From Trichoplax adhaerens (taxonomy: Eukaryota; Animalia; Placozoa): 64,000 bases of DNA. Shown in pieces: positions 979 to 38,100 of the stretch. A program made the translations under genes and the position numbers. The stretch covers positions 8,518,159 to 8,582,158 of the forward strand of contig NW_002060944.1 in NCBI RefSeq assembly GCF_000150275.1, given 5' to 3'. The number at the start of each line of letters is the position of its first letter. Positions within the stretch are counted from its first letter, which is position 1. The notes under the pieces were generated by a model. That model saw only the letters and a list, made by a program, of their open reading frames with translations. It did no database searches and had not been told where the DNA came from.

Positions 979-3900
979 ATGGATGAAATTCAGTTATTAC
1001 CTTGTCCTTATTTAGATACACAAGTCAGTAATTTCCCAATCGTCACCGTCAAGACTGATGGCGAAGCAGACAATGTTCATAATTGTACCACCAATGTCAG
1101 TTTTGATGCAAGTAATCAACGCTACGTGAATGAACAACATTCTCCACCAATTCATCATACGCCGCCATCACCATCCAATCAACATCCTCATCATCATCAT
1201 TCACTTCATCATCACCATCCTTCTCTTCCACATCATCAACAGCAACATCCACAACAACAGCAACAACAATCTCAACAACATCAAACTTTATTCAGAAGGT
1301 TATCCGATAGTAGCGCTTATATATCAACTTTAGCCAGTCAGGAGAAACAACAACTAATGCGTCGATCGTCAGACAGTACTTCACTGATGGCCACAACTAA
1401 TGTTGATCGATTGAATGTGAGAAGATTATCCGATGGGATCGCTTTAAATAATGGCCATTTCCATCCACCCATGTTTAATAATCAATGCCAGCAGCAACCA
1501 ACTCAACAACAGCAACAACAAGCACCACCACCGCCACAACAGCAACATCAACGTTTATCACCAGCCAATAGCTTAAGTGGTACTGTCTTTTCAGGCAATC
1601 CTAATCCATTTCAGCAAGGATTTCCTAACGTTAAGCAAGAGTGTCAAGATAATTGTTATGATGTCGGTATGTAAGCCAAATGTTAAAAATGTGGGCGAAA
1701 TCAGTTTTTATATTAATCCACTGCGTTGATGTAAAGTAGTGGGCGATTGATTTCCATCGATTTCTCCATGTTATACAATATCCTATTCGCCATTTCATTT
1801 TTATACTTTTCCATTTTTTCTCTCCCTCCCCAATAATAATTAATTATCCTTCTTTTAATTTAATTTAATTTTACTGTACACTAGATAATTACTGACTAGT
1901 TCATATAATTTTAGACTTGTTGACATCGGCTAATAAGTAAAAAAAATGGTTGAAGATAAAATGGTTATGCTACTGTACTATTAAATTGGGTAGTAGTTAG
2001 TAAAAATGTTAACTTCTCTACATAGCCAGTCATACGCAGTTTACGATCATATAGGATAGTATTATTTCATCTATTATAAAATAGCCTTTCTAGTGGTGTA
2101 GTATTGGCTATGGAGTAACCATTATGAAATTATCAGGGGACGTTGACTGCAATATTCATTTTCTTTGTAATATACTTTGTATTTGGCAGAGAATATACTT
2201 AATTAAACAACTCAAAGTGTTATGATAAAGTAGACAGTCTTTAGGAGACTAGAAATAGATTAATCGAGTAACAGTTTGATATCCTTTCATCAAACAGAAC
2301 GGTCTCTTTAGTATTTTCTCGTTATTATTGAATATTTTTAGTTTTGATCTTATTATTGATCCATTTCGATTTTTTTTTCCCCTTATACCTTTCTGTTCGG
2401 GGTTGTACGTATGACTGTAATGATTTATAATATAAACATCAGTTGTTAAAAACTTTAGGAATTAATATTAGTAAAATTATCGTAAGTTAGTAAGTTATTG
2501 ATATTAATTTTACCGTTAAATCAGCAAAAAAGGATAAAAATGAAACTAAACAAGTTAATATAACTCAAAATCGATCTTCATAGAACTATTTTAATATTAG
2601 ATCGTAAAGTTATAAGGATATTGTAGAGTAAAATTGAAGCTAGGATGGGAGCTATGAAAATGATGATTCCCATAGTGAATGATATGGACTTTGCTGTTGT
2701 CTTGAAGCTGTTCTGCTATATGTTAACAACGATCGTAGTTAATTTTTAGAACATCCAATGAAATAGACAACGAAAATAATTAAAACGATAGAGTTGATAG
2801 ACGTATAGTTAGTATAGCAGTTGATGTATTTAATATCTACAAGTAATTCAGTTAAATAAGTTATAGACTGCAGTATAGATATTATTTCCTATGACTCTAC
2901 GATAGTTCCAATATGTTATCCTGAACGGTTGGAATTGATCTGCCAAACACTAACGTGATCGACTGTACTACTATCTATTAATGTCATGTTGAATAAACTT
3001 TAACGCTATAGATGAAGAAAGATTGATCCTGATGTTAAAGCCATCAAATATATTGAATAGCGAATTTGCTTTCAGTTTAAACAATAAACTATTGATAATC
3101 GAAATAAAACAAAGTAAAATTAATTTGAAAATCCCTAATGTTCAAAGAATATCTATTATTATTCAAATCTAACTACCGATGTTTATTAACGTTATAAACT
3201 GTAGAAATGGCATCACCATCTTCAGCTATGAGCGATAGTCGAAGTCCATATACTCCAATGGTTAATGCACCAGAAGTTCGATCTCCTTATGATGTCAATT
3301 CTATGTATGATGATCATAGTGAACATTTATACAATGATGGTGTCGGTAAGATGCAATCATTAAATTCGTCCTAGCTATTTTATAAGTATTCGTATAATTA
3401 TGCAATAAAATTTCGAATTTTTTTCCATTATAAATGACCATCATAAATAACTTATTTAATCATCGCATTAATCAGATTACAAAAAAATAAAAATTGTCTT
3501 ACCGTAAAATGAAGTATTATACAGAAAATCGATCCTTTCAGTGATGCCAACTCCCTTCATGATCAACATACCTTAAATAGATTTTATGCCTATCGAATTA
3601 GTAACTGATATCAATTACTTAATCATTAATTAGCTATTATTGTAGAAAGCACACGGTAGTCTATATTTTACATGTATAACGTTTCGTCAGGGAAGAATAA
3701 AGGCTTTTCAAAGTGATCTTGATAACTTACTTTATCTCTTCTATTAATCATCAACAATGTAAAAGTTAGTAGTATACAAGGTAATTCCAGATTAATATTT
3801 TCTGAATACACATATATAAGACCTAAAAATAATATTATCGTATATGATCTAAAAGTGCGGTCCTTTTTTATTATTTAGATAAAGCTGTAGACGAATCATA

Positions 3901-5060
3901 AATCAGCATAGTACTACAGCCAATATAAAGATCATTCCAAGTTTTTAACATATTGCGTGATTTAAATATAGGGAAATTAAGTAAATGATTTACTCGTCGC
4001 AAAGTTTTCAATCCTTTTATTGTTATAGTAATACAAATTAGCTAAAGTCATAAAAAATATTCTCGTTATATAGTGTTATGTAGTTAAGGTTCTCTATTCA
4101 ACTATGACTTTTTAATAATTATGTACATAGTCGTCAAATCTAACCTCTTCACTCCTGTGTTAGAAATGGATGTGGGAGTATATTTCGACTGTTAAATATC
4201 AAACATTTCCTTTACATCGTTAGCGTAAAAATTTATAAAATCACACAAGAACTAGTAACTCAGTGCCTTTACTTGACTAATTTATTGCCATTTATTAAAA
4301 TATGTTTATATCATCACCTGATTATTACTTCAATCGCAAAACGTGTTATAAAATATACCTTTTGCTGAGCGTATATTGACTGCTAATGCAAAATTAATGG
4401 CCGTTCAATATACCTTCTTTCTACTCTAGTACTGTATATTAAATGTAACTCAGGGTATGATCGATAGGAATTATCATTGTCAATATTTTAGAAACAAATT
4501 ATCTTTATTTGTTTTTTGTAGCAGTTGCTGAAAGCAAAGGTAGATCTGAAGGTTATGATCTACCTACCTTTCAACGCCGTGGCTCATTACAGCTGTGGCA
4601 ATTTTTAATAACTTTGCTAGACGATGCTGAATGTAGTGGCATTATCTCATGGACAGGGCGTGGAATGGAATTTAAATTAAATGATCCAGAAGAAGTTGCA
4701 CGCCGATGGGGACAACAAAAGAATCGTCCAGCCATGAATTACGATAAATTAAGTCGATCGCTACGCTACTACTATGAGAAAGGTATTATGCAAAAGGTAG
4801 CTGGAGAACGTTATGTCTACAAATTTGTTTGTAGCCCAGACGCATTATATAAAATGGCTTATCCTGATGCTAACAAATCAGTTCCAAGGCAAGAATATCG
4901 GTCACCTTTAATTCAACAGGAACATCCTATTATAAACATCTCGAGTGTACGCCATCAACCGCCTTTTCAACGTTATCTTGATCAAACACACTATCCTGAA
5001 CCCGGTCGTTATATTGAAAACTGTAATAGCAACACGGAATGGCAAAGCAACATTATGTAG
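979..5060 (+). CDS. ETV1/4/5: PEA3-subfamily ETS transcription factor (ETV1/ETV4/ETV5-like); exons 979-1666, 3205-3345, 4522(or 4525)-5060
   Basis: The last exon encodes an ETS domain with the PEA3 signature [18 protein letters not shown]...[42 protein letters not shown]. The N-terminal YLDTQV resembles the PEA3 N-terminal YLDQQV motif, and VKQE is a SUMO consensus. Phase-1 GT-AG junctions (G|gtatgt at 1666, tag|AA at 3205, G|gtaag at 3345, tagcag at 4519-4524) join in frame. Confidence 0.93.
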
Positions 5061-13290: not shown

Positions 13291-19395
<6,105 letters not shown>

Positions 19396-20795: not shown

Positions 20796-21799
20796 CCCGA
20801 ATCCCTTCCCTTGAGTCGCGCTTTGCGTTGACATTGAAGGACGCTGGTGTGTTGGTATCACGTTAGTGTTGAAATGGCGGACGATTTGCTCTCGTCGTCT
20901 ATTATGATTACGAGTTCACCACAACTTCTCACTTTCAGTATTCTGTTTTTGACTATAGTAGCACAGCCACTTTTAGGCATACAATTTGCAGTATTGTAAG
21001 TCCATACAATTGATCGGCTCTCGCCGCCACTCGCACAAGTCCTGCTGTCGTACTCAGCCTTCGGGTACAATATTTGGCCAGCGAGACTCGATGACATTTG
21101 ATCAACTGCAAAACAATATTGATCCACGCAAGGGTTGAAATTTCTACCGTGGAAAACGCTCATTGTCATCTGTGCAATATTATTACTACACAGCATCAAG
21201 ATTACAGTTATGATATACAGTACTGCCTCATCACAATATGTCGGCCACATCAGCCACTATAGCATGACTATTTAGAAAAACCTCATAGTTTCTGATATAC
21301 GATTCTGAAAATTTCGTCTTGGCTTGACTTTTTAATTAACTAATGGGAATGAAACCCTACTACTTTATTTTGAAGCGAAACTTCATCCATTCATGATACA
21401 GGAAGTCAATTATTTTACAAAATGTAAACAAGTTACAATCCTTAAGTACACTGTTGTGCGCCGATACCCTATCATAAGTTGGCTTGGCAGTAGGATATAC
21501 GGTAATTAATTTATAACCAGTATTTCAATGATGAGGAAGTACTATAGTGGACGCTATTGAAAGGCCTACGCAATCAAAATGGGACAAATTAAATATGGAT
21601 TGCATCAAAATTCCCCTTAAGAAAATTCCATCCAGTACTACTATGCAAAACTAAGACTTCATGATAACAACATCACCATCAAAGCCAAAGAGCTACTCTA
21701 TCATGATGCATTTATTATTCCTTATGAAAATGGATCCAAAGTAGAGATATACGCTTACACAGTATAGTTAGACATGCTTTTGTACAGTCTCTAGTCTCT

Positions 21800-22450: not shown

Positions 22451-25115
22451 CTATTGTACTCGTAGGTGCAGTACTGTATATGACTATGTTTAATTGAATA
22501 AATCATAAGCTAGACTGTATATAAGCGGGAGCATCGAGTCCGTAGAGAGTTCTTCTCATCGATTCTTTGTTATAGTACCGTTCCAGTTAAAATTATGTTG
22601 TAATAAAGCTTAAAAGAGTAGATCTTGCACTAGACTAAATACAGTAAAAGGTGGGGGGGGGGGGGGCATCCAGTCAATGGAGAATTCTTCTTGCCGATAG
22701 TGTACTGTAGATATCATTCCGGTTAAAATTTATTGTAGTAAAGCTTAATTCGGCTTTAACAATCCAGCTAGTCATACAGACTGTCAACTCTGAAAATGGC
22801 CTTTTCTACAGCCCCACATACGTAAAGCGCTAGAGTACGGGTTTTCGATTGATCCATATCACTCAGTATTTAATAGCTAGTACCTAAAATTACATAATCA
22901 GCATGAATCAGCCAAACATGATAGAGATGCTAACAAGCCAGATTAACTTTGTAACAAACGCTTAGATTGGCAAGTGTGACAATTTTTAACGCAGTTTTAC
23001 TTCATTTTAATTGTTGAAAATGCTCTAGGAATAATTAATTGAATCAAAATTAGATGATGGACTGAAAGTGATTACGGTTATTAATACTAATTTATCATAT
23101 CAACGCCTATGTTTATGATATCAGTGCGATATAAAATACAACACTTGCCATCTTGATATATCATAAGCGGTTACTGTACATAATAAAGTAACCACAAGTT
23201 GTAAAGAGTTACGATATTCCTATCCGGGACTTCTACGTAAGCAGGGGGGGGGGGAGGGACAAATAAGAGACCGAGTTAATATTATATCTATTCATCGCTA
23301 AAAAAGTGGTCAGATAATTGCAACCTTGATAGGATGCAGCTGTCGGAGATGGATTTCAATACAATCAAAACTAAATTTACTACCTTTGTATATTCATTAA
23401 AGAGTATTTATTTATTTGACATTATCCAACAATCAAATTAATCACAGTAGAATTTGAATAGAAATCAATATCATTTAAGATATAGCTACATCGATATTAA
23501 TACTTGTATAATCGCTATTCAATCCAAGATTGTATTATCTTTAGGCTGGACTAGGTGTCGTTGTTGCGAAATAATACAATCTTTCCAAGTTATACGAGAA
23601 GTTGTAATGCAGTAGGATTACTTTTAGCTAGATATTCCTTGTTGTCGTCCGCCTATTCGATCAATATTAGCGTCAAACTAACTAGATGCCAAACGTACTT
23701 ATATTTTACCAATATAAATACGAAATCAACCGCACGTGTCTCTGTAGTGATATCGATTTTTATAGCCCAGTAATAAAACATGCAATGATATATCAGAAAT
23801 TGTAGGTTAATTCCTAGCTATAATATGCTCAATTTATCCCATTGTAATTGTAATTAATCCGATAGAATTAAAGCTAATATTTGAAATAGATGACTGGCTT
23901 GGTAAATAAATTAGACGTGAATATACTGTTTTAATTTATCATTATAGATAAGTTTACCAATACAGCAATATCGGATCTGATGAAATAAATGATATCATAC
24001 AAGCGACTTAGATGCTACAATGGAGTGCATTCTATGATTTTCATACATGTGTCGTAGTGTCGCCGCAATTTGAATTAAAAATTTTGCATTTTTACATATG
24101 CATATGTAATTTATGTGATTTTTGAGCCTACAATCATCGTCAATTACTACTACTGGATGTTACTGTACTGATTCCGAAAGTAAAATGGAACAACTACAAA
24201 ATAAGAAATAAATCGATAACATAATTGATGGAAATTAAATCACCGTAACATCAAAACAGTAACCTAAGCCAGCACGATGGTGATCTTAGCAATAATTTTA
24301 AGCACAATCATCTTTAAGCCCAGCTATTGAGTAATTGTCTGCTTTAAAAAAATGAATTACTACAATAAGTATACAGTAGGTATCATGGTAAAACGATAGT
24401 TACAGAAATCAGCTGATACCTATATCAATTGTGATGTAACGAAGCACACCTATATCTTTCAACAAGGAATATCTATTTATATCAGACGTTTATAATTGCA
24501 ATGTTAACGGTAATGGTGATCGATCAAGGCTGACGATTGTTCTTAAAAATAGTAGACATAGTTATTGCTAAAAAGAATGATGAAAATCTTTGGAAATACT
24601 GATTAATATTGCATTGTTCGTTTAATTTTCGCCATTGTATTCTTGATCGATATCATGATATACATATACTCATATACGTCGCATATATATATTATATACG
24701 GCAAATGTCTAGATATATAGAGAGGTGCGGTATATTCTTGGATGTAATCTATAATTGCTATTGATAACAGCTGAATTGATTAGACAACAGCAAGCAAAAT
24801 GATTATTGAAGGACTAACATCACTACCATCTAAATAACAGCACCTGTACATTGTTTAACAATTAAATTCTAGTTAATTCTAGTCCTAACCTTAGGAATGA
24901 TGGCCTATAGTTAATTCTAACAGATATAAGATCCAGCATCAACTATAGAATAAGCCTTACAATGTATTACTTCTTTATATGTCAAATTATGTAAAATTTT
25001 TTTGTTTTATACAATTTTCTTTCGTTTTCTTCAAAACTTGTTCGTGTCTTCATCGATACAGATTGTTGTAGCCAATTTATGAGCTCGTATTCATATCACG
25101 CCACTGTTTACTTTT

Positions 25116-26725
25116 TTACGCTACGACAAAATAACTTTCAAGGCTGCGCTTGAGAATTTTTTGCTTTGTTTCATTTTGCCTTCTCCGATAGCGCTTGCAT
25201 ACGCATTTACGAACAACTGACGGGAAAGCATATTTCGTAGTACCATCAAAACAATTCATTTTAACGCGTATAGTTTTACGAAAATGGGCCACACAACGCC
25301 AAATATAGCGCTTGCTAGCGCTAACATCTTGTGGGATATTATTCGGTCTACAAGCGCCTTCGCATAGTAAATCTTTAATAGATCGCTTACTAATGCATAA
25401 GCCCTTCATAACATAGCGATGAATCTTCTTTCCATCGCAACAACTTGATGTATTTGCTAAACGATTGAGGAAAAAAATGAAAATAATTTAAAATGTGTCA
25501 AAAAAAATCCGACAAAATAAGAAAAATTCAAATCAGATGCATATCCTGCCAGCATAAGCCATAAACTAGTTACTCTCCCTCTTATCTATAAACGCATAGG
25601 CACTGGGAAGCAAAAATGTTTTTATAATATAAGGTAATAAAATGAAGCCCTTTAAAATAAACTTTTAAATATTAAATTCTTATTTAAAGTAACAAAAATT
25701 TGATCATCAAATTGACAGGTACTCTAGTTGGTTACAATTAAAATAAATTGGCCATGTCATAAAAGTAAAAAAGTGATAATATACTACAGGTATTAAATCT
25801 TGCTAGAAATCTAATATTGATATATCAAAATAGTCATTTAAGACTATTTACAATTCCAATCCTAAAATTCATCTAATATTTGACCTGGTTGAATGTCGGT
25901 GAACGACATGAATTGCGACGTTTGATGAATCTTAATTCTTAGATAGTAAAAATTATATGATAATTCTTACTTGGAGCACAATTTACTATCTTATGTTCAC
26001 AATATGAAAAATGCATTGCAATTTCTGGTAAACTTCTTACGTGTAATCGTCAATCAACAATCTAAATAATTTTTTTCGACATCTTTATCGCTTTAAGAAT
26101 TAAAACCTAGCAACACATTCTCAAAATGAAACTAATACGTGCAAATAGTTCATGCAAAGTGGCGATTTGATTAATAAGTATTATCCTTTCAAATAATATC
26201 TAAATTAATTAGCTATCATGTAATAGGAGATAATTTAATACACAGATTACAAAGCCCTTAAAATTAGTAAATTGTCAAAAAAAAATAAAAATCCGATCGT
26301 CAACACTTTCCAAACGTTTATGTTACAAATGGCAAAAATCTTCAATATGTCATGATTATCTAAGGCTATTACATCAGCCGCATTCAAGTCAACAAATGAT
26401 AGACCTAAGTTGGCATATTAATTACAAGATAAAATAAAAGTTTATTATCAACGTTGGTATAGAACAGAAAAATTGCGAAAAATTGTAGAACAAATTCAAG
26501 AGAGCAATGAAAAAAATACGGCATTTTTATGTACAGAAAATTTAGATCAGTTCACTTACCAATACTAGTGCATTTCTTTGTGAAAACTTGCTGTTCCTTT
26601 TTAGGTTTAACTTGATCCGGTGACTGAGTTGGTGGTGATAATTTAGACAAATCAATTTGGCCATCCACTGCTACAATCAATATAGCGAAGAAAAGGCACA
26701 AGCTAACTAGCATCAATTTGATCAT
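25116..26725 (-). CDS. SOSTDC1: Secreted sclerostin/SOSTDC1 (Wise)-family cystine-knot protein; exons 26560-26725 and 25116-25456 (about 168 aa)
   Basis: Exon 1 encodes a signal peptide, MIKLMLVSLCLFFAILIVAVDG|Q, and ends at a phase-1 G|gtaag donor. Exon 2 encodes CCDGKKIHRYVMKGLCISKRSIKDLLCEGACRPNNIP...WRCVAHFRKTIRVKMNCFDGTTK...VVRKCVCKRYRRRQNET, with CxGxC and CxC knot motifs. Residues match the SOST/SOSTDC1 pattern as recalled (RYVTDGPC..., WRCV...C.DG....CKCKRYTRQHNES). The symbol denotes the family, not a tested one-to-one orthology. Confidence 0.88.
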
Positions 26726-29700
26726 GGTCGGCCTGCTGTATCACTTATCGTATATAGAGGTGGAAATCGCTAGATGATAGCTATACTTTAATTTTCGAGA
26801 TGGTTGGATAATTGGCTTTCTACCAAGAAACAGCTATAGTAGTCCAACTGTCTTTTCTTCTATGTTAAAAGATGATCCTGTAAGTCAACTAGGGATCGAA
26901 TAACAAATAGAGTATTGATCTGACTGATATGCCTAAATAACGATATAATATCAAGGAATGGTCTAAATTGAAGTGGCAGAGTTGAGGAGATCAAAGTGTG
27001 ATCCGATGATGGCGTTGTCTGGTTAATATAAATTGATGGTAAGACAATAAAGTTAAAGTAGTCTGAGAAAATTTGAACTACGATAACAATAGCATTGATA
27101 AGGTAAGATCAAGATAACAAAATATCAGTAAGAAAAGTAATGTTGTCAATGATTATTGTGATATATAGATAAAATGATAGGTTAGGTTTTGATACAATTA
27201 TCACACCAATCTTTCTGAACTAGTCATAATCATACTTGTTGCCAATACAATGAGTTACCTAGCCAAGACTAAAGGAAAACAATTATACAATATTGTCTTA
27301 TTCAAAATCAACACCAGGTGAAAATTTAATGCGTCCTTATCTACGTTATTTACTTTTCTGGACATCAATGTTATCCATTCAATTACTGAAATAATTTCCA
27401 AGATGAATAAGGAGCCTTAACTAGTAACTGGAAGAGAAAACTATTATCATTATCGTCGTCGTTATTATTCCGCTGCTTGACTGTATTGCAAATAGCTAGG
27501 AATGCGGTAGACCAATTGATTTTCCCTTATTTTGATTTCCCAATTAAATACCCAAGCATTAACAGAGATAACTAGTGACTTATAATAGTAATTGTTTAAT
27601 TACAATTTAATTAACGATAAATTAGTAGGGGGTAGGCAAAGAGTTGTTTTTCTCTTTGATTCTACACCTACAAGCAAAAGGATATATTAGCAACTTACAT
27701 TTGGTATCGCTATAGATATTTACTAATTCAAAAAGAGTGCCATAATGTCTTCTATTTATATTTTACGGTAAACTTTCTTCATAAATAAATGCGATTTTAG
27801 AGCTAAAAATGGCAATATAGACTAGCAGTGGAACGATAAGCTAATCAATCAAATTTTATCATGACAGATTGACAATTTTTTTGACAACTTGTTAGTACAA
27901 CTTTTGCATATGAGATTAACTACAGATCACGCCAAAAAATAAGTTATTTACTAAACCTGATCTTATACGATAGGGCAACAACATGATTACATAGTAAATT
28001 GTATACTCAAACTACAAAATATTAAAAAAATATGATTTCATTTTCAGTAGCACAATTTACTTTTATTGTCGACTCAGCCATAAATGATAGTAGATTACAA
28101 TTTTGTACATAGTATAAAGCGTCTAAGCTAAGATGGATTATAGCGAGCAGATGGATGAAGTAAGAGAGCAGGTGGCGGATGGGCAAAGGCCATGAGAACG
28201 AGTATTAACTGTTGTAATAGTATAGAGAAGATAAGAGAAAAGGGTAAAAAATATGGAGTAATGTCATTCACATTAGGTATGTCTATCTGCAAAAATAGAT
28301 TTCCACTCAAGTGTAGCGTTATCAAATTTAATTTATAAAATTTCGATCTTAATTATTGAGAATTAAATAAGAGTATTAGATTATCTACGTTTCAATAGGT
28401 TGGATAGTTAATATCGATGATTAATTTAATTCATCGCTGAGGCTAGATAAGTTCCGCTTAATCAGGCTGGATATGTAGCCCTATGGGCTGCTTTATGGCT
28501 ATTTAATCAGTGATTATAAAATTCTATTATATCTCTATCTTATACTATTCATGTCTAGAAAATTTTCTCACACAATCTATAGTCATTTCTGACTTATTGA
28601 TGCTATTCTTGACGTCGATAGGGCATTTATCTCTTCAACCATTATCAAATACAATAAAATTATAATTGTACTTATAAAGAATTAATCAGAACCATATTAT
28701 TTTTATCGGTTCTAAATTAAATACAGAATGACTTTGATCAGTGATTGAATTCAATATTATCTTCCATGCAACAATTTTTCACGATTATCTTGTAACCTTT
28801 AAGGAATTATCTTACTCAAAATTATGATACCTCGCAATCTTCATTAAAAACTAATGAGATTACAACCCTTATCGTTGTATTAGCTTGTTCAATCCAATAT
28901 CACCAATTCGTTTTGATGTAAACCCACCTAGTGTAAACCACTATTATCGATAATATCTAAAATTTGGATATGGTTGGCTATGTTCAGTTTTGATGCCATT
29001 TAATCGCCTATCTAAAAGGTAGATTATATTATAATTTCAAAAAGTTTCAATTTTATCGTCCAATCAATAAGCAAGTAAACAAGTTTATTCCAAATTTTCA
29101 ACGACATAATCAAAATGTACTTCTTTCTTACTTGATGGCTAAGTAATGAATATTTTGATCAATTTCGTTATTTATTTGTTATCTCTACATCTAACCTAAG
29201 TTAAAGTAATATTATCATCGATCTTTTACTTTCTTTGTTTCTTCTTGATCGTCATAAAGTGGCAAAATAATAAGTCAAAAACATTAGACTTAATTAGCCG
29301 TGACATTAAGATATTATTTGCAACAATAACTCTAAATGAATAACGAATTGTATCGTTTTTATTCCTACCGAAATCAGGTGAAGGAAACTAGAGTAATCTA
29401 TTCTTAAATTGGCCAATCTTAAGAATTTAATAGCTTTAAAAATGATTCATACGGTATAAATTAAAATGAATTCAATAATAATACAGTTACTATGTCAACT
29501 GCCTTTATTGGCTTACTATGTGACGGCTTCTGAATTACCTTTGCCTAATAAGAATAAGATTGTTATTGCCTGAATTGAAAGCATTCAAAGCTCTTGAAAG
29601 TTATTCAACGAACCAAGCGGTCAGTAAGTGTTGTTAACCACTTTTAAACCGGATATAATAAAATTGCTATTGCGAAGGAATCACGAATCATCTGCTCTAG

Positions 29701-35126: not shown

Positions 35127-38100
35127 TTAATCATCCTCTATCGAGCTATTATTATCAAAACCGCTACTGCTACTGCTACTGCTATTACTCAATCTCCTAT
35201 CTAATGCTATGGCTGTCATAGCTGTATATTTAGGATTTTGGTTGATTGAAAATGTTCCATTTTCTTCGTCTTCTACGGTTACAACATGATTTTTAGTTGC
35301 CACTGGAGCAACTTTCTTATCATCTTGTGAATCATCTGATTGCGCTAGACCTACTGGTAATTTTGACGGATATCTCTCGACATAGACTGTATTCGCTTGA
35401 TCCTTGTCTTTCTTTCGCCGACTACGGATGATGTGATTGATTTGGATATAAATCAAAACTGACAGTACAGAGCATAAGACGCTACTAACGCTGCTGACTA
35501 CTACTAATGTAATGATATTTAGTTTAGAATTATCGTCGTTCCTAGCAGAAACAGTTGAATCTGTTGTACCAGATTGAATTTGTTGTTGCTGGCCATCTAA
35601 TGGAAAACATAGATTAAATAAAAGATCTTAATTAACCTTACATATATATATATCAGACAGATAGACAAGATTTTAAAACTACAGCCAATTATTCTACTTT
35701 TTATTGGTCAATAAATGCAAGATTGCATTAACGATGCGGGCCGAAATTAAATCCTTTATACTATCTGCAAAATTATTCATCAACTAAACTGAAATTTATT
35801 GGCATTTGACGATTCCATGCAGTATCTGAAATTTTAGATTGCAGAATCGCGTTTTAAACTAGTTTATTAAGTTTACCTGTATTACTACACTGAGCCATAG
35901 TCGGATAAACTTCACCACAAGTTTGAATCTCCGTTTGGATCACATCGCAGCTTGTACTATTATGACAATTACAATTTCGCGATCGAACTTGGCGATTATT
36001 AATGCAAGCTGACCAAATTGTCCAATCATCGCAAACTTTATCGCTATCAGAATAGCAATCAAATCGATTACAACTCTTGGATTCTCGCATATCATATCCA
36101 CCACATTGATCAGCATCTAAAACTTGATTGGATACTCCATCACGGCATGTTCTAGTTCGAATTTGATTGCCACCACCACATGTTCGACTACATGGCGACC
36201 ATTCCGTCCAACAACTCCAAATTGGAATGACAGCAGCATTCACCACTAATCATTTATTAGTAGTAAACAAATTAGTATCCACATTCATACGTGTATTCAA
36301 ATACTCGTCTATTAATCAATTTGGTCGCTATTTGCGGCAGATTATTTTAATGGTTCGTTATTAAATTAAATTGAAGGCTTTAATTCTCAATCTTTAAAAT
36401 TTTAGTTATATTCATCGGAATGAGTAATTAGGACATATTTATATGACGTTTTTAAGCTTGATGATCAAATCCAATTACGAATAGCTCGATTATTGATATT
36501 CGAGGTATCCGTCATGGGTATGACTCATTTTTATGCAACTATCAACACCTGAATAATTTTCTCTCCTATATTACAATTATAAGAAAATTTTTACCTTCAG
36601 TTGTGCATGGATTCAAGGTGCAGACGACGGTTTCAATCGAATTACCATGGCATGGTTGACCACCGTCGGTGGGAACTGGATTATCGCAGGTTCTATTTCG
36701 AGTGCGGATACCAGTTCCGCATGTACTACTGCATGGTGTCCATGGCTGCCATGATGACCACTGACCATCATTACTTTGAAATTTTTGGCATTGGCCATTA
36801 GCATCGCAATTACGAGATTCTGTTTCCATTTCATTAATTCGCATATCCTTCTCTTTACGTTCTGCTGGTAATCGAGCAAAACAAGTAAATCGGAATCGTC
36901 GTTGCGTAGTGGAATGATTTACGGCTAGCCATGGTGTCCAAACACTCGTTAGCGTTTGCTCTTGGCAATATTGACTCGCAAGGCAGGATTTCTGCTCGAG
37001 ATAGTCACCAGAGCAATCGCGACCACCATATTGTGGCGTTGGATTATTACATTCTCTTTTTCTGGTTGTTACCATGTCATTATCACATTTCTTATTGCAA
37101 GATGCCCAACTAGACCATTCTGACCAAGCTCCGTCGATTGCTAAATGACAGATATGGAAAGAAATTAAGTAAGCCTCTCTACCGTATATCATGCTTTCAA
37201 CACATAATATCAATATACATGTTAGAAATGGAGATCGGAGATGAATTGGAAATGATAGATTGTAGATAGATGCATACCTGGGCAAATAATTTGCTGATTA
37301 CAGGAACGAGTTTCTTCTGTCGTTTTGTCGCAAGGTGGACGACCACAGCTTCTTGTACGTCTCTGAACACCATCAAATCCGCATGATTTTGAGCATGGAG
37401 ACCATTCCGACCATGGTGAATAATTTTGTACACCTTTATAGAATTATTCATCATTAGCAACAACTTTCCACTACTATGGCAGTATTATAGGCTAGCATGA
37501 CATTGTCTGGCTAAAGAAGATGCTATTTTAATGCTAATTTACCTGTGCAATTAACTGCATCGATTTTAACTATTTGCGTTGTACGACAACCTAAGCAATA
37601 TTGCTTTCTACACTGACATTTGCCAAGATCACTCTGATGGCAACTATACCAATTTGTCCAACCCTCTATAAGATAGATGCAACAGCAATGGAAATTTTGT
37701 GTTAGAATCGATTCATTTTAATATGATTAAAACAAAACCTTCAATTCATACCTGAGTCGATCTTGGATGTAGGACACTTGCTTAAATCTTGTATCCAATT
37801 AGAACTAAATTTTGACAGTTATCATTCAGTCCAAAATGGTGATTATTATATATTATGATAATTATAAGTAATTGATTGCTTACAGTGGCGTATATTCGGT
37901 ACATTTGTTGTCCTTAACAGACCACCCGCAGTATGGATCATGAGCTAGAAGGCACTGGCTATAGGACAACATCGAAAGCATACAAATATTTTGTTAGAGG
38001 TATTTCCTTAATTGCATTCTTCCAATACCAGTCTACTTACCTTTGAGTGGCATACCGACCGCATCGATTGATGCCAATTCTTAAAACTTTCGTTTCAGTA

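What the first reader, a model, noticed from the sequence alone, without database searches (positions are those of the whole stretch)
25116..26725. Sclerostin/Wise-family Wnt-BMP antagonist with an intact NxI LRP5/6 motif in an apparently early-branching animal
Seen: a two-exon secreted cystine-knot protein with SOST/SOSTDC1-type cysteine spacing, the C-terminal CKRY..xNET sequon, and a short loop 2 that starts with P-N-N-I. Established: vertebrate SOST (PNAIG) and SOSTDC1 (PNWIG) use an NxI motif in loop 2 to bind the first beta-propeller of LRP5/6 and inhibit Wnt signalling, and both are two-exon genes. Inference: if the organism is a placozoan, this LRP-directed Wnt brake predates bone, teeth and possibly Bilateria. 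The ORF track misses the signal-peptide exon, so the gene is easy to mis-annotate.
Basis: partly seen in the sequence, partly recalled or inferred. Interest (0 to 1): 0.85.

Follow-up and report, generated by a model that had tools for sequence, protein, structure and literature searches.

The report
Known Trichoplax sclerostin-like gene; motif unsupported
This is a real, expressed gene of the simple animal Trichoplax for a secreted sclerostin-like protein, but the same protein was already listed as such in a 2014 paper, and the short "NxI" motif that made it look like a Wnt-receptor blocker is most likely a chance match.

Summary
A two-exon minus-strand gene (26725-26560 / 25456-25116) encodes a signal peptide and a sclerostin-type cystine knot. 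RNA contigs from three studies join the exons exactly at the predicted GT..AG intron. Pfam Sclerostin scores 44.9 bits (cut-off 27), the only PDB sequence matches are sclerostin, and all 70 patterned deep-search hits share SOST/SOSTDC1 cysteine spacing.

The genome is Trichoplax adhaerens. Exon 2 is identical to the row "SOSD_Placozoan" (XP_002110162.1) in Roch & Sherwood 2014, which also reported cnidarian orthologues. The gene, its family and its pre-bilaterian age are therefore published. I add that the SOSD-Cul1-ETV1 neighbourhood they describe in other animals is present in this window.

The "intact NxI" reading is not supported:
- N-N-I sits at loop-2 positions 3-5, while the vertebrate motif is at 8-10, and three alignments place it upstream of that motif.
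- A 92%-identical placozoan relative has D-N-I.
- Anthozoan, mollusc, nemertean, echinoderm, hemichordate, amphioxus and lamprey orthologues lack NxI.
- No basic residue follows the tripeptide.

What is conserved family-wide is the tail CxCKRYxRx[H/Q]Nx[S/T]. Function is untested. The scan had not noted this gene before.

The parts
26560..26725 (-). Coding exon 1: start codon, signal peptide, linker with one extra Cys (C52). It ends in phase 1; the last base G starts the split codon G|CA = Ala.
   Evidence: The junction is seen in RNA contigs.
26660..26725 (-). Predicted signal peptide, residues 1-22 (MIKLMLVSLCLFFAILIVAVDG|Q).
   Evidence: Hydropathy of 3.14 over residues 4-20 and small residues at -3/-1. 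No dedicated signal-peptide predictor was available.
25457..26559 (-). Single intron, 1103 nt, GT..AG.
   Evidence: Skipped in contigs of X6, X7 and X11.
25116..25456 (-). Coding exon 2: the whole cystine-knot domain, the C-terminal tail and the stop codon.
   Evidence: Pfam Sclerostin 44.9 bits and DAN 33.7 bits. Identical to the published SOSD_Placozoan row.
25197..25439 (-). Sclerostin-type cystine knot, C6 to C86 of exon 2. One extra Cys (C5) lies immediately before it.
   Evidence: Spacing 13-10-CxGxC-18-13-15-CxC, shared with all 70 patterned homologues. In the AlphaFold model the core has pLDDT above 90, and the top three fold matches are sclerostin chains.
25296..25349 (-). Loop 2 (RPNNIPQDVSASKRYIWR), 18 residues, among the shortest in the family.
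   Evidence: It has low model confidence and no secondary structure.
25335..25343 (-). I judge it a probable chance match.
   Evidence: for alignment register. P0001 has D-N-I. Chance estimate.
25167..25196 (-). Family-wide conserved tail KRYRRRQNET, with the N-x-T sequon at 25167-25175. It corresponds to the SOST segment KRLTRFHNQS, which contacts LRP6 propeller E2.
   Evidence: N-x-S/T is present in 65 of 69 homologues, preceded by H in 37 and Q in 20. PMC7585440.
26726..26987 (-). 5' untranslated region, as far as the RNA contigs reach.
   Evidence: Contig pieces end at 26955-26987.
24500..25115 (-). 3' untranslated region. It continues beyond 24500: the X6 contig runs about 350 nt further.
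   Evidence: table 8.
4509..5060 (+). Syntenic neighbour: ETS-domain exon of a PEA3-type (ETV1/4/5) transcription factor.
   Evidence: Top PDB matches are ETV1, ETV5 and ETV4 at 182-187 bits, against 137 for ETS1. Pfam Ets 120 bits.
14448..19395 (-). Syntenic neighbour: cullin-1 gene. The N-terminal exon is at 19009-19395, and Cullin-family exons lie at 14448-16332. The gene may extend further down.
   Evidence: The N-terminus matches only Cullin-1 in the PDB. Pfam Cullin hits on three exons.

Best explanation
This is the Trichoplax adhaerens orthologue of the sclerostin / SOSTDC1 (SOSD) branch of the DAN cystine-knot family. The same protein is listed as SOSD_Placozoan, XP_002110162.1, by Roch & Sherwood 2014. 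It is a transcribed, correctly spliced two-exon gene under purifying selection. It encodes a secreted, probably N-glycosylated protein of about 146 mature residues with the eight canonical cysteines plus one lineage-specific pair. It lies in the ancestral ETV1/4/5 - CUL1 - SOSD neighbourhood. Those points are shown here.

Inferred: it acts outside the cell as a pathway antagonist. My single best guess, at about 40%, is sequestration of BMP/TGF-beta-type ligands, the ancestral DAN-family activity that vertebrate SOSTDC1 retains. Docking on an LRP-type beta-propeller through family-wide features (the fingers and the KRYxRx[H/Q]Nx[S/T] tail) is the next option, at about 30%. The N-N-I tripeptide in loop 2 is most likely a chance occurrence and not the LRP5/6 propeller-1 motif. 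In the sequences examined here, that motif occurs only in vertebrate members.
For: Gene reality: the splice junction appears in three studies, and the five coding differences listed between runs are all synonymous. A second placozoan is 92% identical in protein.

Family: Pfam Sclerostin 44.9 bits against a cut-off of 27. It is the only Sclerostin-model hit in the whole genome, whereas the other DAN-model loci are of NBL1/gremlin and bursicon/GPH type. The only significant PDB sequence matches are sclerostin. The fold search puts three sclerostin chains on top. A profile search of 1.84 billion proteins gave 71 hits, 70 of them with SOST-type spacing, and the nearest are anthozoan 'sclerostin domain-containing protein 1'. 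In the tree, placozoan plus anthozoan form a clade at 100/100.

Identity with the published sequence. Synteny: against the paper's statement on Cul1 and ETV1.

Against NxI: alignment register; DNI in P0001; 0 of 37 non-vertebrate-type loops carry NxI; lamprey has NWA/NLA, amphioxus DYA, hemichordate, snail and nemertean WYA. The tripeptide is followed by P-Q-D, whereas SOST and DKK1 have a basic residue there that contacts acidic LRP6 residues (PMC7585440). Any replacement of the Asn abolishes sclerostin activity (PMC3843708).
Against: No function was tested. A short-loop member of the sclerostin group (P0010, RPPNSIGGKWW) shows that NxI can sit near the start of a shortened loop, so the register alone does not exclude function. 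The Trichoplax runs laid all keep NNI. Trichoplax has an Lrp5/6 and lacks Dkk, WIF-1 and Cerberus (PMC13128682), so an LRP-directed antagonist would fill a gap. The D-N-I relative rests on one assembled contig. The split between BMP and LRP targets is my judgement, not a result. My outgroups in the tree were only this genome's three other DAN-type proteins, on very long branches.
Confidence: 0.8

Rival explanations
1. One reading: P-N-N-I is a working NxI motif that docks on the first beta-propeller of Trichoplax Lrp5/6 and blocks Wnt signalling. On this view, an LRP-directed Wnt brake of the sclerostin type predates Bilateria.
For: N-x-I preceded by Pro lies in a flexible loop 2. The tripeptide is kept in all Trichoplax runs laid. 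The genome has an LRP5/6-type locus, with about four propellers followed by LDL-A repeats at G000:C1414:3702612-3710056, and a published, broadly expressed Lrp5/6 (PMC13128682). One vertebrate-type homologue, P0010, carries NSI in a similarly shortened loop.
Against: It is not in register with the vertebrate motif in three independent alignments. The Asn is Asp in the only other placozoan sequence. NxI is absent from every anthozoan, protostome, echinoderm, hemichordate, amphioxus and lamprey orthologue seen, so it would have to be convergent. There is no basic residue after the Ile. The chance expectation is 3-7%.
Confidence: 0.1
2. The protein does bind an LRP-family receptor (Lrp5/6 or an LRP4-like protein), but through features conserved across the whole SOSD family. 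These are the C-terminal tail KRYxRx[H/Q]Nx[S/T], which in human sclerostin sits on LRP6 propeller E2, and/or finger loop 3, which sclerostin uses for LRP4. NxI would be a later vertebrate addition that raised affinity for propeller 1.
For: The tail is the most conserved element outside the knot (N-x-S/T in 65 of 69 homologues; N94 and K87 are nearly invariant) and is intact in the window. Kim et al. show that the HNQS tail contacts E2 and contributes to Wnt1 inhibition, and that the tail is also needed in WISE (PMC7585440). Both vertebrate paralogues bind LRP5/6.
Against: The key contact in sclerostin is His174. The window, the anthozoans and fish Sostdc1b have Gln there. The conserved Asn may simply be a glycosylation site: in the crystal its side chain points to solvent. 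Nothing here tests binding.
Confidence: 0.3
3. The open reading frame is a decaying or non-functional remnant, and its sclerostin likeness has no present function.
For: Loop 2 is unusually short, and the placozoan branch in the tree is long (1.84 changes per column).
Against: It is transcribed and spliced in runs of three studies. All cysteines, the CxGxC glycine and the tail are intact. The five coding differences listed are all synonymous. It is 92% identical to another placozoan's protein.
Confidence: 0.03

Closest known systems
SOSD_Placozoan, Trichoplax adhaerens XP_002110162.1 (Roch & Sherwood 2014, Genome Biol Evol, PMC4079206, supplementary Fig. S1 and table S2D)
   Same: The knot and tail in their alignment are identical, residue for residue, to the window's exon 2, including CRPNNIPQDVSA and KRYRRRQNETKQKILKRSLE. 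It is the same gene.
   Different: The paper gives no splice evidence, does not discuss NxI or LRP5/6, and (in the text I read) describes the Cul1/ETV1 synteny for limpet, amphioxus, sea anemone and human but not for the placozoan. I could not see whether the public model includes the signal-peptide exon.
Anthozoan 'sclerostin domain-containing protein 1' (Acropora cervicornis KAK2570075.1 cluster, Exaiptasia diaphana XP_020917250.1)
   Same: These are the nearest relatives (65-79 bits, 36-41% identity). They share the cysteine spacing and the tail KRYTRKQN[QM]T, and form a clade with the placozoan at 100/100. Neither has NxI at the vertebrate position.
   Different: Their loop 2 is 24 residues (LPMDQLPFFPNFSKIISRHKREWR) against 18. 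They lack the extra Cys pair of the placozoan protein.
Vertebrate sclerostin (SOST) and SOSTDC1 / Wise / USAG-1
   Same: Fold, eight-Cys pattern, two coding exons, secretion, and a C-terminal [H/Q]N-x-S/T tail. The chromosomal company of an ETV1/4/5 gene is also shared (human positions are from the paper and my own knowledge).
   Different: About 30% identity. The vertebrate loop 2 is 24-34 residues with LPN[A/S/W]IG at positions 6-11, followed by basic residues. The window has IPQDV at the place where HMMER aligns LPNAI. It has no long basic C-terminal cluster, and Gln replaces His174.
Other DAN-family proteins of the same genome (NBL1/gremlin-like at G000:C1409:4480561-4480770; bursicon/GPH-like pair at G000:C1386:79599-84814)
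   Same: Cystine-knot CxGxC...CxC core. Both match Pfam DAN.
   Different: Their cysteine patterns differ (CxCC or CC in finger 2), they give no Sclerostin-model hit, they lack the KRY...NxS/T tail, and they lie on very long separate branches in the tree.

Membership tests
Sclerostin / SOSTDC1 (SOSD) subfamily of DAN cystine-knot proteins (Pfam PF05463) | Scores above the curated cut-off of the Sclerostin model, and better than on the generic DAN model. | tested here: met
   Sclerostin 44.9 bits against a cut-off of 27; DAN 33.7 bits. It is the only Sclerostin hit in the genome.
Sclerostin / SOSTDC1 (SOSD) subfamily of DAN cystine-knot proteins (Pfam PF05463) | Eight-Cys pattern C-13-C-10-CxGxC-n-C-13-C-15-CxC, lacking the additional finger-2 cysteines of gremlin, NBL1 and bursicon. 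| tested here: met
   The spacing is identical to all 70 patterned homologues. Roch & Sherwood define SOSD by the missing 6th and 7th Cys. The window has one extra N-terminal pair (C52 of exon 1 and C5 of exon 2).
Sclerostin / SOSTDC1 (SOSD) subfamily of DAN cystine-knot proteins (Pfam PF05463) | Nearest relatives and tree position lie inside the family. | tested here: met
   Caveat: the outgroups were only this genome's own DAN paralogues.
Sclerostin / SOSTDC1 (SOSD) subfamily of DAN cystine-knot proteins (Pfam PF05463) | Conserved tail CxCKRYxRx[H/Q]N-x-[S/T] directly after the knot. | tested here: met
   CVCKRYRRRQNET. The tail is found in 65 of 69 homologues.
Sclerostin / SOSTDC1 (SOSD) subfamily of DAN cystine-knot proteins (Pfam PF05463) | Conserved gene neighbourhood with Cul1 and an ETV1-type ETS gene. 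| tested here: met
   A PEA3-type ETS exon at 4509-5060 and CUL1 at 14448-19395 lie within 22 kb of the gene.
Sclerostin / SOSTDC1 (SOSD) subfamily of DAN cystine-knot proteins (Pfam PF05463) | Two coding exons with the intron a few residues before the first knot Cys. | tested here: inconclusive
   Two exons and the junction are shown. Whether the intron position and phase match those of vertebrate or cnidarian genes could not be compared, because no genomic DNA of those genes was available here.
NxI-motif ligands of LRP5/6 propeller 1 (sclerostin, SOSTDC1, DKK1) | N-x-I at the position of sclerostin N117-I119 (loop-2 positions 8-10). | tested here: not met
   The window's NNI is at loop positions 3-5. 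The position aligned to NAI/NWI reads Q-D-V by HMMER, a gap by MAFFT, and D-V-S in the paper's alignment.
NxI-motif ligands of LRP5/6 propeller 1 (sclerostin, SOSTDC1, DKK1) | The Asn is invariant, since any substitution abolishes activity. | tested here: not met
   The 92%-identical placozoan P0001 has Asp. The requirement is stated in PMC3843708.
NxI-motif ligands of LRP5/6 propeller 1 (sclerostin, SOSTDC1, DKK1) | A basic residue just after the motif (NxIGR or NxIK) that contacts the acidic patch of propeller 1. | tested here: not met
   The window has N-N-I-P-Q-D. The requirement is described in PMC7585440.
NxI-motif ligands of LRP5/6 propeller 1 (sclerostin, SOSTDC1, DKK1) | Physical binding to LRP5/6 propeller 1 and inhibition of Wnt signalling. 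| not testable with these tools
   This needs protein biochemistry. The one complex prediction gave no verdict.

The most novel reading that the evidence does not exclude
Trichoplax SOSD is a working secreted antagonist of Lrp5/6. It would bind through the family-wide C-terminal tail, through the N-N-I tripeptide, or both, and would help shape the central-peripheral Wnt axis recently described in this animal. There only SFRP is so far counted as an extracellular Wnt inhibitor. That would make LRP-directed Wnt inhibition by a sclerostin-type protein older than Bilateria.
Probability: 0.2. Interest if true: 0.55.

Novelty: already known. Interest (0 to 1): 0.22.

Why it matters
The gene adds nothing new to the catalogue: its family, its presence in a placozoan and in cnidarians, and so its pre-bilaterian age were published in 2014.

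Three smaller points are worth keeping:
1. The Wnt literature on Trichoplax (Pang 2010; the 2026 MBE paper) lists its secreted antagonists without this gene. Groups who can now overexpress and knock down genes in Trichoplax have an untested candidate.
2. Across the 70 family members compared here, NxI at the vertebrate position occurs in one clade only. Its named members are teleost fish, and human SOST and SOSTDC1 carry it too. Lamprey has the Asn without the Ile. Amphioxus and every other invertebrate orthologue seen have neither. This dates the propeller-1 contact to vertebrates and warns against reading function from a three-residue motif.
3. The ETV1/4/5 - CUL1 - SOSD gene neighbourhood extends to Placozoa, which is a clean piece of ancient microsynteny.

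Tried and rejected
I therefore could not fetch the DNA of the 92% relative P0001, could not compute dN/dS, and could not name its species.

2. A metagenome scan with the two-sequence alignment found no further placozoan copies.

3. Complex prediction: I supplied the two exon-level halves of the Trichoplax Lrp5/6 propeller 1 as separate, unjoined chains, with SOSD exon 2 as the partner. The result was 'no answer' (median 0.33 against a mark of 0.34).

4. Joined model left out. Every search used exon 2 (window:25119-25454:-) or exon 1 (window:26561-26725:-) by reference. Consequently no signal-peptide predictor or full-length fold was run. In one script the residues of both exon translations were pooled, only to count amino-acid composition.

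5. Outgroups: this genome's bursicon/GPH-like and NBL1-like proteins sit on very long branches, and one fell inside an unresolved fork in the quick tree. The tree shows where the gene sits within SOSD. The exclusion of other DAN branches rests on the Pfam, PDB and profile-search results.

6. I could not align the Trichoplax propeller-1 pocket residues with LRP6, because the PDB search prints only the top alignments, which were LRP2.

7. Whether the public model XP_002110162.1 includes the signal-peptide exon is unknown. It did not appear among candidates of 62-196 residues, and the supplement part I read did not show its N-terminus.

8. Literature searches for Nematostella + SOSTDC1, placozoa + SOSTDC1 and the accession returned nothing. 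Earlier scan notes held nothing on this gene.
Full report
WHAT IS THERE

On the minus strand an ATG at 26725 opens a 55-codon exon. It encodes a hydrophobic leader (MIKLMLVSLCLFFAILIVAVDG|Q; mean hydropathy 3.14 over residues 4-20) and a Pro/Gln/Lys-rich linker containing one cysteine. The exon ends at G|GTAAGT (26560/26559). After 1103 bases, an acceptor TTTAG|C (25457/25456) opens exon 2, which runs to a TAA at 25118-25116. The split codon G|CA reads Ala.

Exon 2 holds the whole domain: C-13-C-10-CEGAC-18-C-13-C-15-CVC, followed by KRYRRRQNET. Each was used by reference on its own.

IS IT A REAL GENE?

Yes. Laying four runs from four studies on 24500-27300 gave contigs in three of them (X6, X7, X11) that skip exactly 1103 bases between 26560 and 25456. 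The X11 joint is drawn two bases to the side, which a synonymous T>A at 26561 would explain. The transcript reaches about 26987 at its 5' end and runs beyond 24500 at its 3' end.

The five differences listed inside the coding sequence (25122, 25197, 26609, 26627, 26696) are all third-position and synonymous. The other differences listed lie in untranslated regions or, in one case, in the intron. A protein from another assembly (P0001) is 92% identical over exon 2. It is evidently an ORF called on genomic DNA of another placozoan, because it reads through the last intron codons.

WHICH ORGANISM?

The window's genome has 105.6 Mb in 1414 contigs. Three of its cystine-knot proteins read the same as the rows B/GPH_Placozoan, NBL1_Placozoan and SOSD_Placozoan in the supplement of Roch & Sherwood 2014, which are Trichoplax adhaerens sequences. 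Earlier notes of this scan had called the genome Trichoplax, and this check confirms it.

WHICH FAMILY?

- Pfam: exon 2 scores 44.9 bits on Sclerostin (cut-off 27), 33.7 on DAN (cut-off 22) and below threshold on Cys_knot.
- Own genome: it is the only Sclerostin-model match. The DAN model finds three further loci, one NBL1/gremlin-like and a divergent pair of bursicon/GPH-like genes.
- PDB sequences: the only significant matches are three sclerostin entries (best E = 5.9e-6). No gremlin, NBL1, PRDC or norrin appears even at E <= 10.
- Structure: an AlphaFold model built on 67 family sequences has a confident core (pLDDT above 90 for 55 residues), with a low-confidence loop 2 and tail. Its three best structural matches are sclerostin chains.
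- Deep search: a profile search of 1.84 billion representatives gave 71 hits at E <= 0.001. Seventy of them have exactly the spacing 13-10-CxGxC-n-13-15-CxC.
- Names: clusters with names are sclerostin or SOSTDC1 of Acropora, Exaiptasia, Acanthaster, Bulinus, Glandiceps, Branchiostoma, lamprey and teleosts. Tubulanus (nemertean) and Diadema (sea urchin) clusters are unnamed but have the same architecture.
- Tree: in a maximum-likelihood tree the two placozoan sequences join the anthozoan group at 100/100 support.

That test is not met, so the family assignment stands.

AN INDEPENDENT LINE: SYNTENY

[quoted passage not shown] The window carries both:
- An ETS-domain exon at 4509-5060 (+). Its best matches are ETV1, ETV5 and ETV4 (182-187 bits, against 137 for ETS1).
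- A cullin gene on the minus strand. Its N-terminal exon (19009-19395) matches only Cullin-1 in the PDB, and Cullin-family exons lie at 14448-16332.

The three genes lie within about 22 kb. This supports orthology, not mere likeness, and extends the published microsynteny to Placozoa.

IS IT NEW?

No. [quoted passage not shown] The aligned row is identical to the window's exon 2, loop 2 and tail included. The main text reports SOSD orthologues in sea anemone and coral, and a hemichordate WISE/sclerostin was cloned by Darras et al. 2018. The pre-bilaterian age of the family is published.

What the literature does not do is connect this gene to Wnt signalling in Trichoplax. Pang et al. [quoted passage not shown] The 2026 MBE paper lists Dkk, WIF-1 and Cerberus as absent and SFRP as present, without mentioning SOSD.

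THE NxI CLAIM

Established facts: sclerostin binds LRP6 propeller 1 through N117 and I119 of loop 2, helped by R121. DKK1 uses NAIK. N117A impairs Wnt1 inhibition (PMC7585440). [quoted passage not shown]

1. Register. In all 27 hits with NxI in a full-length loop it occupies loop-2 positions 8-10 (LP..L[LM]PN[WS]I). The window's NNI occupies positions 3-5 of an 18-residue loop. HMMER aligns human LPNAI with the window's IPQDV. MAFFT aligns RPNNI with LPxxL and leaves the NxI block as a gap. The 2014 paper's alignment puts D-V-S under N-W-I.

2. Close relative. P0001 reads R-P-D-N-I.

3. Distribution. Anthozoans have LPFFP. Snail, nemertean and hemichordate have LPWYA. Sea urchins have WY[YF], the sea star has NEG, and amphioxus has PDYA. 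Lamprey has PNWA and SNLA. None of 37 non-vertebrate-type loops contains NxI anywhere. The position-8 motif is confined to one clade (SH-aLRT 98 in the quick tree) that holds the named teleost Sostdc1b and sclerostin. Human SOST and human SOSTDC1 have it too. The simplest history is Asn at the vertebrate stem and Ile in jawed vertebrates, so a placozoan NxI would have to be convergent.

4. Context. NNI is followed by P-Q-D, not by the basic residue that contacts the acidic patch of propeller 1.

5. Chance. With this protein's own composition, 0.034 NxI are expected per 18-residue loop. With a more Asn-rich composition my estimate is about 0.07.

One caveat: a sclerostin-group sequence (P0010) has a shortened loop, RPPNSIGGKWW, so distance from the knot is not an absolute bar.

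WHAT IS CONSERVED INSTEAD

Outside the cysteines, the family-wide features are R-Y in finger 1, Pro at loop-2 position 2, Arg before the fifth Cys, and above all the tail CxCKRYxRx[H/Q]Nx[S/T]. N94 and K87 are nearly invariant. N-x-S/T is present in 65 of 69 homologues, preceded by His in 37 and Gln in 20.

Kim et al. 2020 showed that this segment of sclerostin (HNQS) lies on LRP6 propeller E2, that His174 is the key contact, that the Asn is probably glycosylated and points to solvent, and that the tail also matters in WISE. The window has QNET, with Gln in place of the key His, like the anthozoans and fish Sostdc1b. The tail may therefore be an old receptor-docking element or only a conserved glycosylation site. 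I cannot tell which.

THE RECEPTOR SIDE

The genome has a locus at G000:C1414:3702612-3710056 (+) with many YWTD repeats followed by LDL-A repeats. That order is typical of LRP5/6 and not of LRP4 or LDLR. Its first two exons align to LRP6 residues 27-263, which is propeller 1. This fits the published, broadly expressed Trichoplax Lrp5/6.

A complex prediction, with the two propeller-1 exons as separate chains and SOSD exon 2 as partner, returned 'no answer'. I do not count it either way.

MECHANISM

Shown: a secreted-type precursor with a sclerostin fold, expressed and constrained.

Inferred: an extracellular antagonist. I commit to BMP/TGF-beta ligand sequestration as the single most likely activity (about 40%), because it is the ancestral DAN-family function and SOSTDC1 retains it. 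Docking on an LRP propeller by family-wide features comes next (about 30%), and NxI-dependent propeller-1 binding last (about 10%). The two extra cysteines (C52 in exon 1, and the first C of 'CC') probably form an additional disulfide that ties the N-terminal arm to the knot. An intermolecular bond is also possible.

VERDICT

The feature is already known, and its interest is low to modest.

LIMITS OF THIS WORK

No full-length joined protein was analysed.

Noticed in passing
window 4509-5060 (+), 14448-19395 (-), 25116-26725 (-): ETV1/4/5-type ETS gene, CUL1 and SOSD lie within about 22 kb. This is the neighbourhood Roch & Sherwood 2014 describe for limpet, amphioxus, sea anemone and (loosely) human, so ancient microsynteny is kept in Placozoa.
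   Followed up: partly
window 979-1674 (+): A 231-codon ORF rich in His, Gln and Pro runs, with no Pfam match, lies 2.8 kb upstream of the ETS-domain exon on the same strand. It may be the N-terminal activation-domain exon of the ETV1/4/5 gene. No ETS_PEA3_N match was seen.
   Followed up: partly
window 35854-37285 (-): Two large exons encode several thrombospondin type-1 repeats (TSP_1, SEMA5B-like TSP1_2, properdin-like). They belong to a multi-TSP1 secreted or membrane protein gene.
   Followed up: partly
window 20858-21250 (-): A 130-codon Cys-rich ORF with no Pfam match lies in the slightly G+C-richer stretch 16-24 kb (0.37 against about 0.31), between CUL1 and SOSD. It is not explained.
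   Followed up: no
G000:C1386:79599-84814 (L003 1423-1752 +, L005 1489-1923 -): Two single-exon bursicon/glycoprotein-hormone-like cystine-knot genes lie 5 kb apart on opposite strands, an arrangement reminiscent of paired hormone subunit genes. One matches the published B/GPH_Placozoan over the stretch shown in the supplement.
   Followed up: partly
G000:C1414:3702612-3710056 (+) (L006, L007): An LRP5/6-type receptor locus: about four YWTD propellers followed by LDL-A repeats. Propeller 1 is split over two exons, L006:3541-3960 and L006:4215-4604.
   Followed up: partly
window 24500-25115 (-) and beyond: The SOSD transcript has a long 3' untranslated region: at least 616 nt inside the stretch laid, and about 350 nt more in the X6 contig. 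That is long for a 168-codon gene in this compact genome.
   Followed up: no
deep-search hits P0025, P0033, P0039: Lamprey SOSTDC1-type proteins (and one unnamed relative) have N-W-A, N-L-A or N-W-T where jawed vertebrates have N-W-I. The Ile of the LRP5/6 motif may therefore be younger than the Asn.
   Followed up: partly
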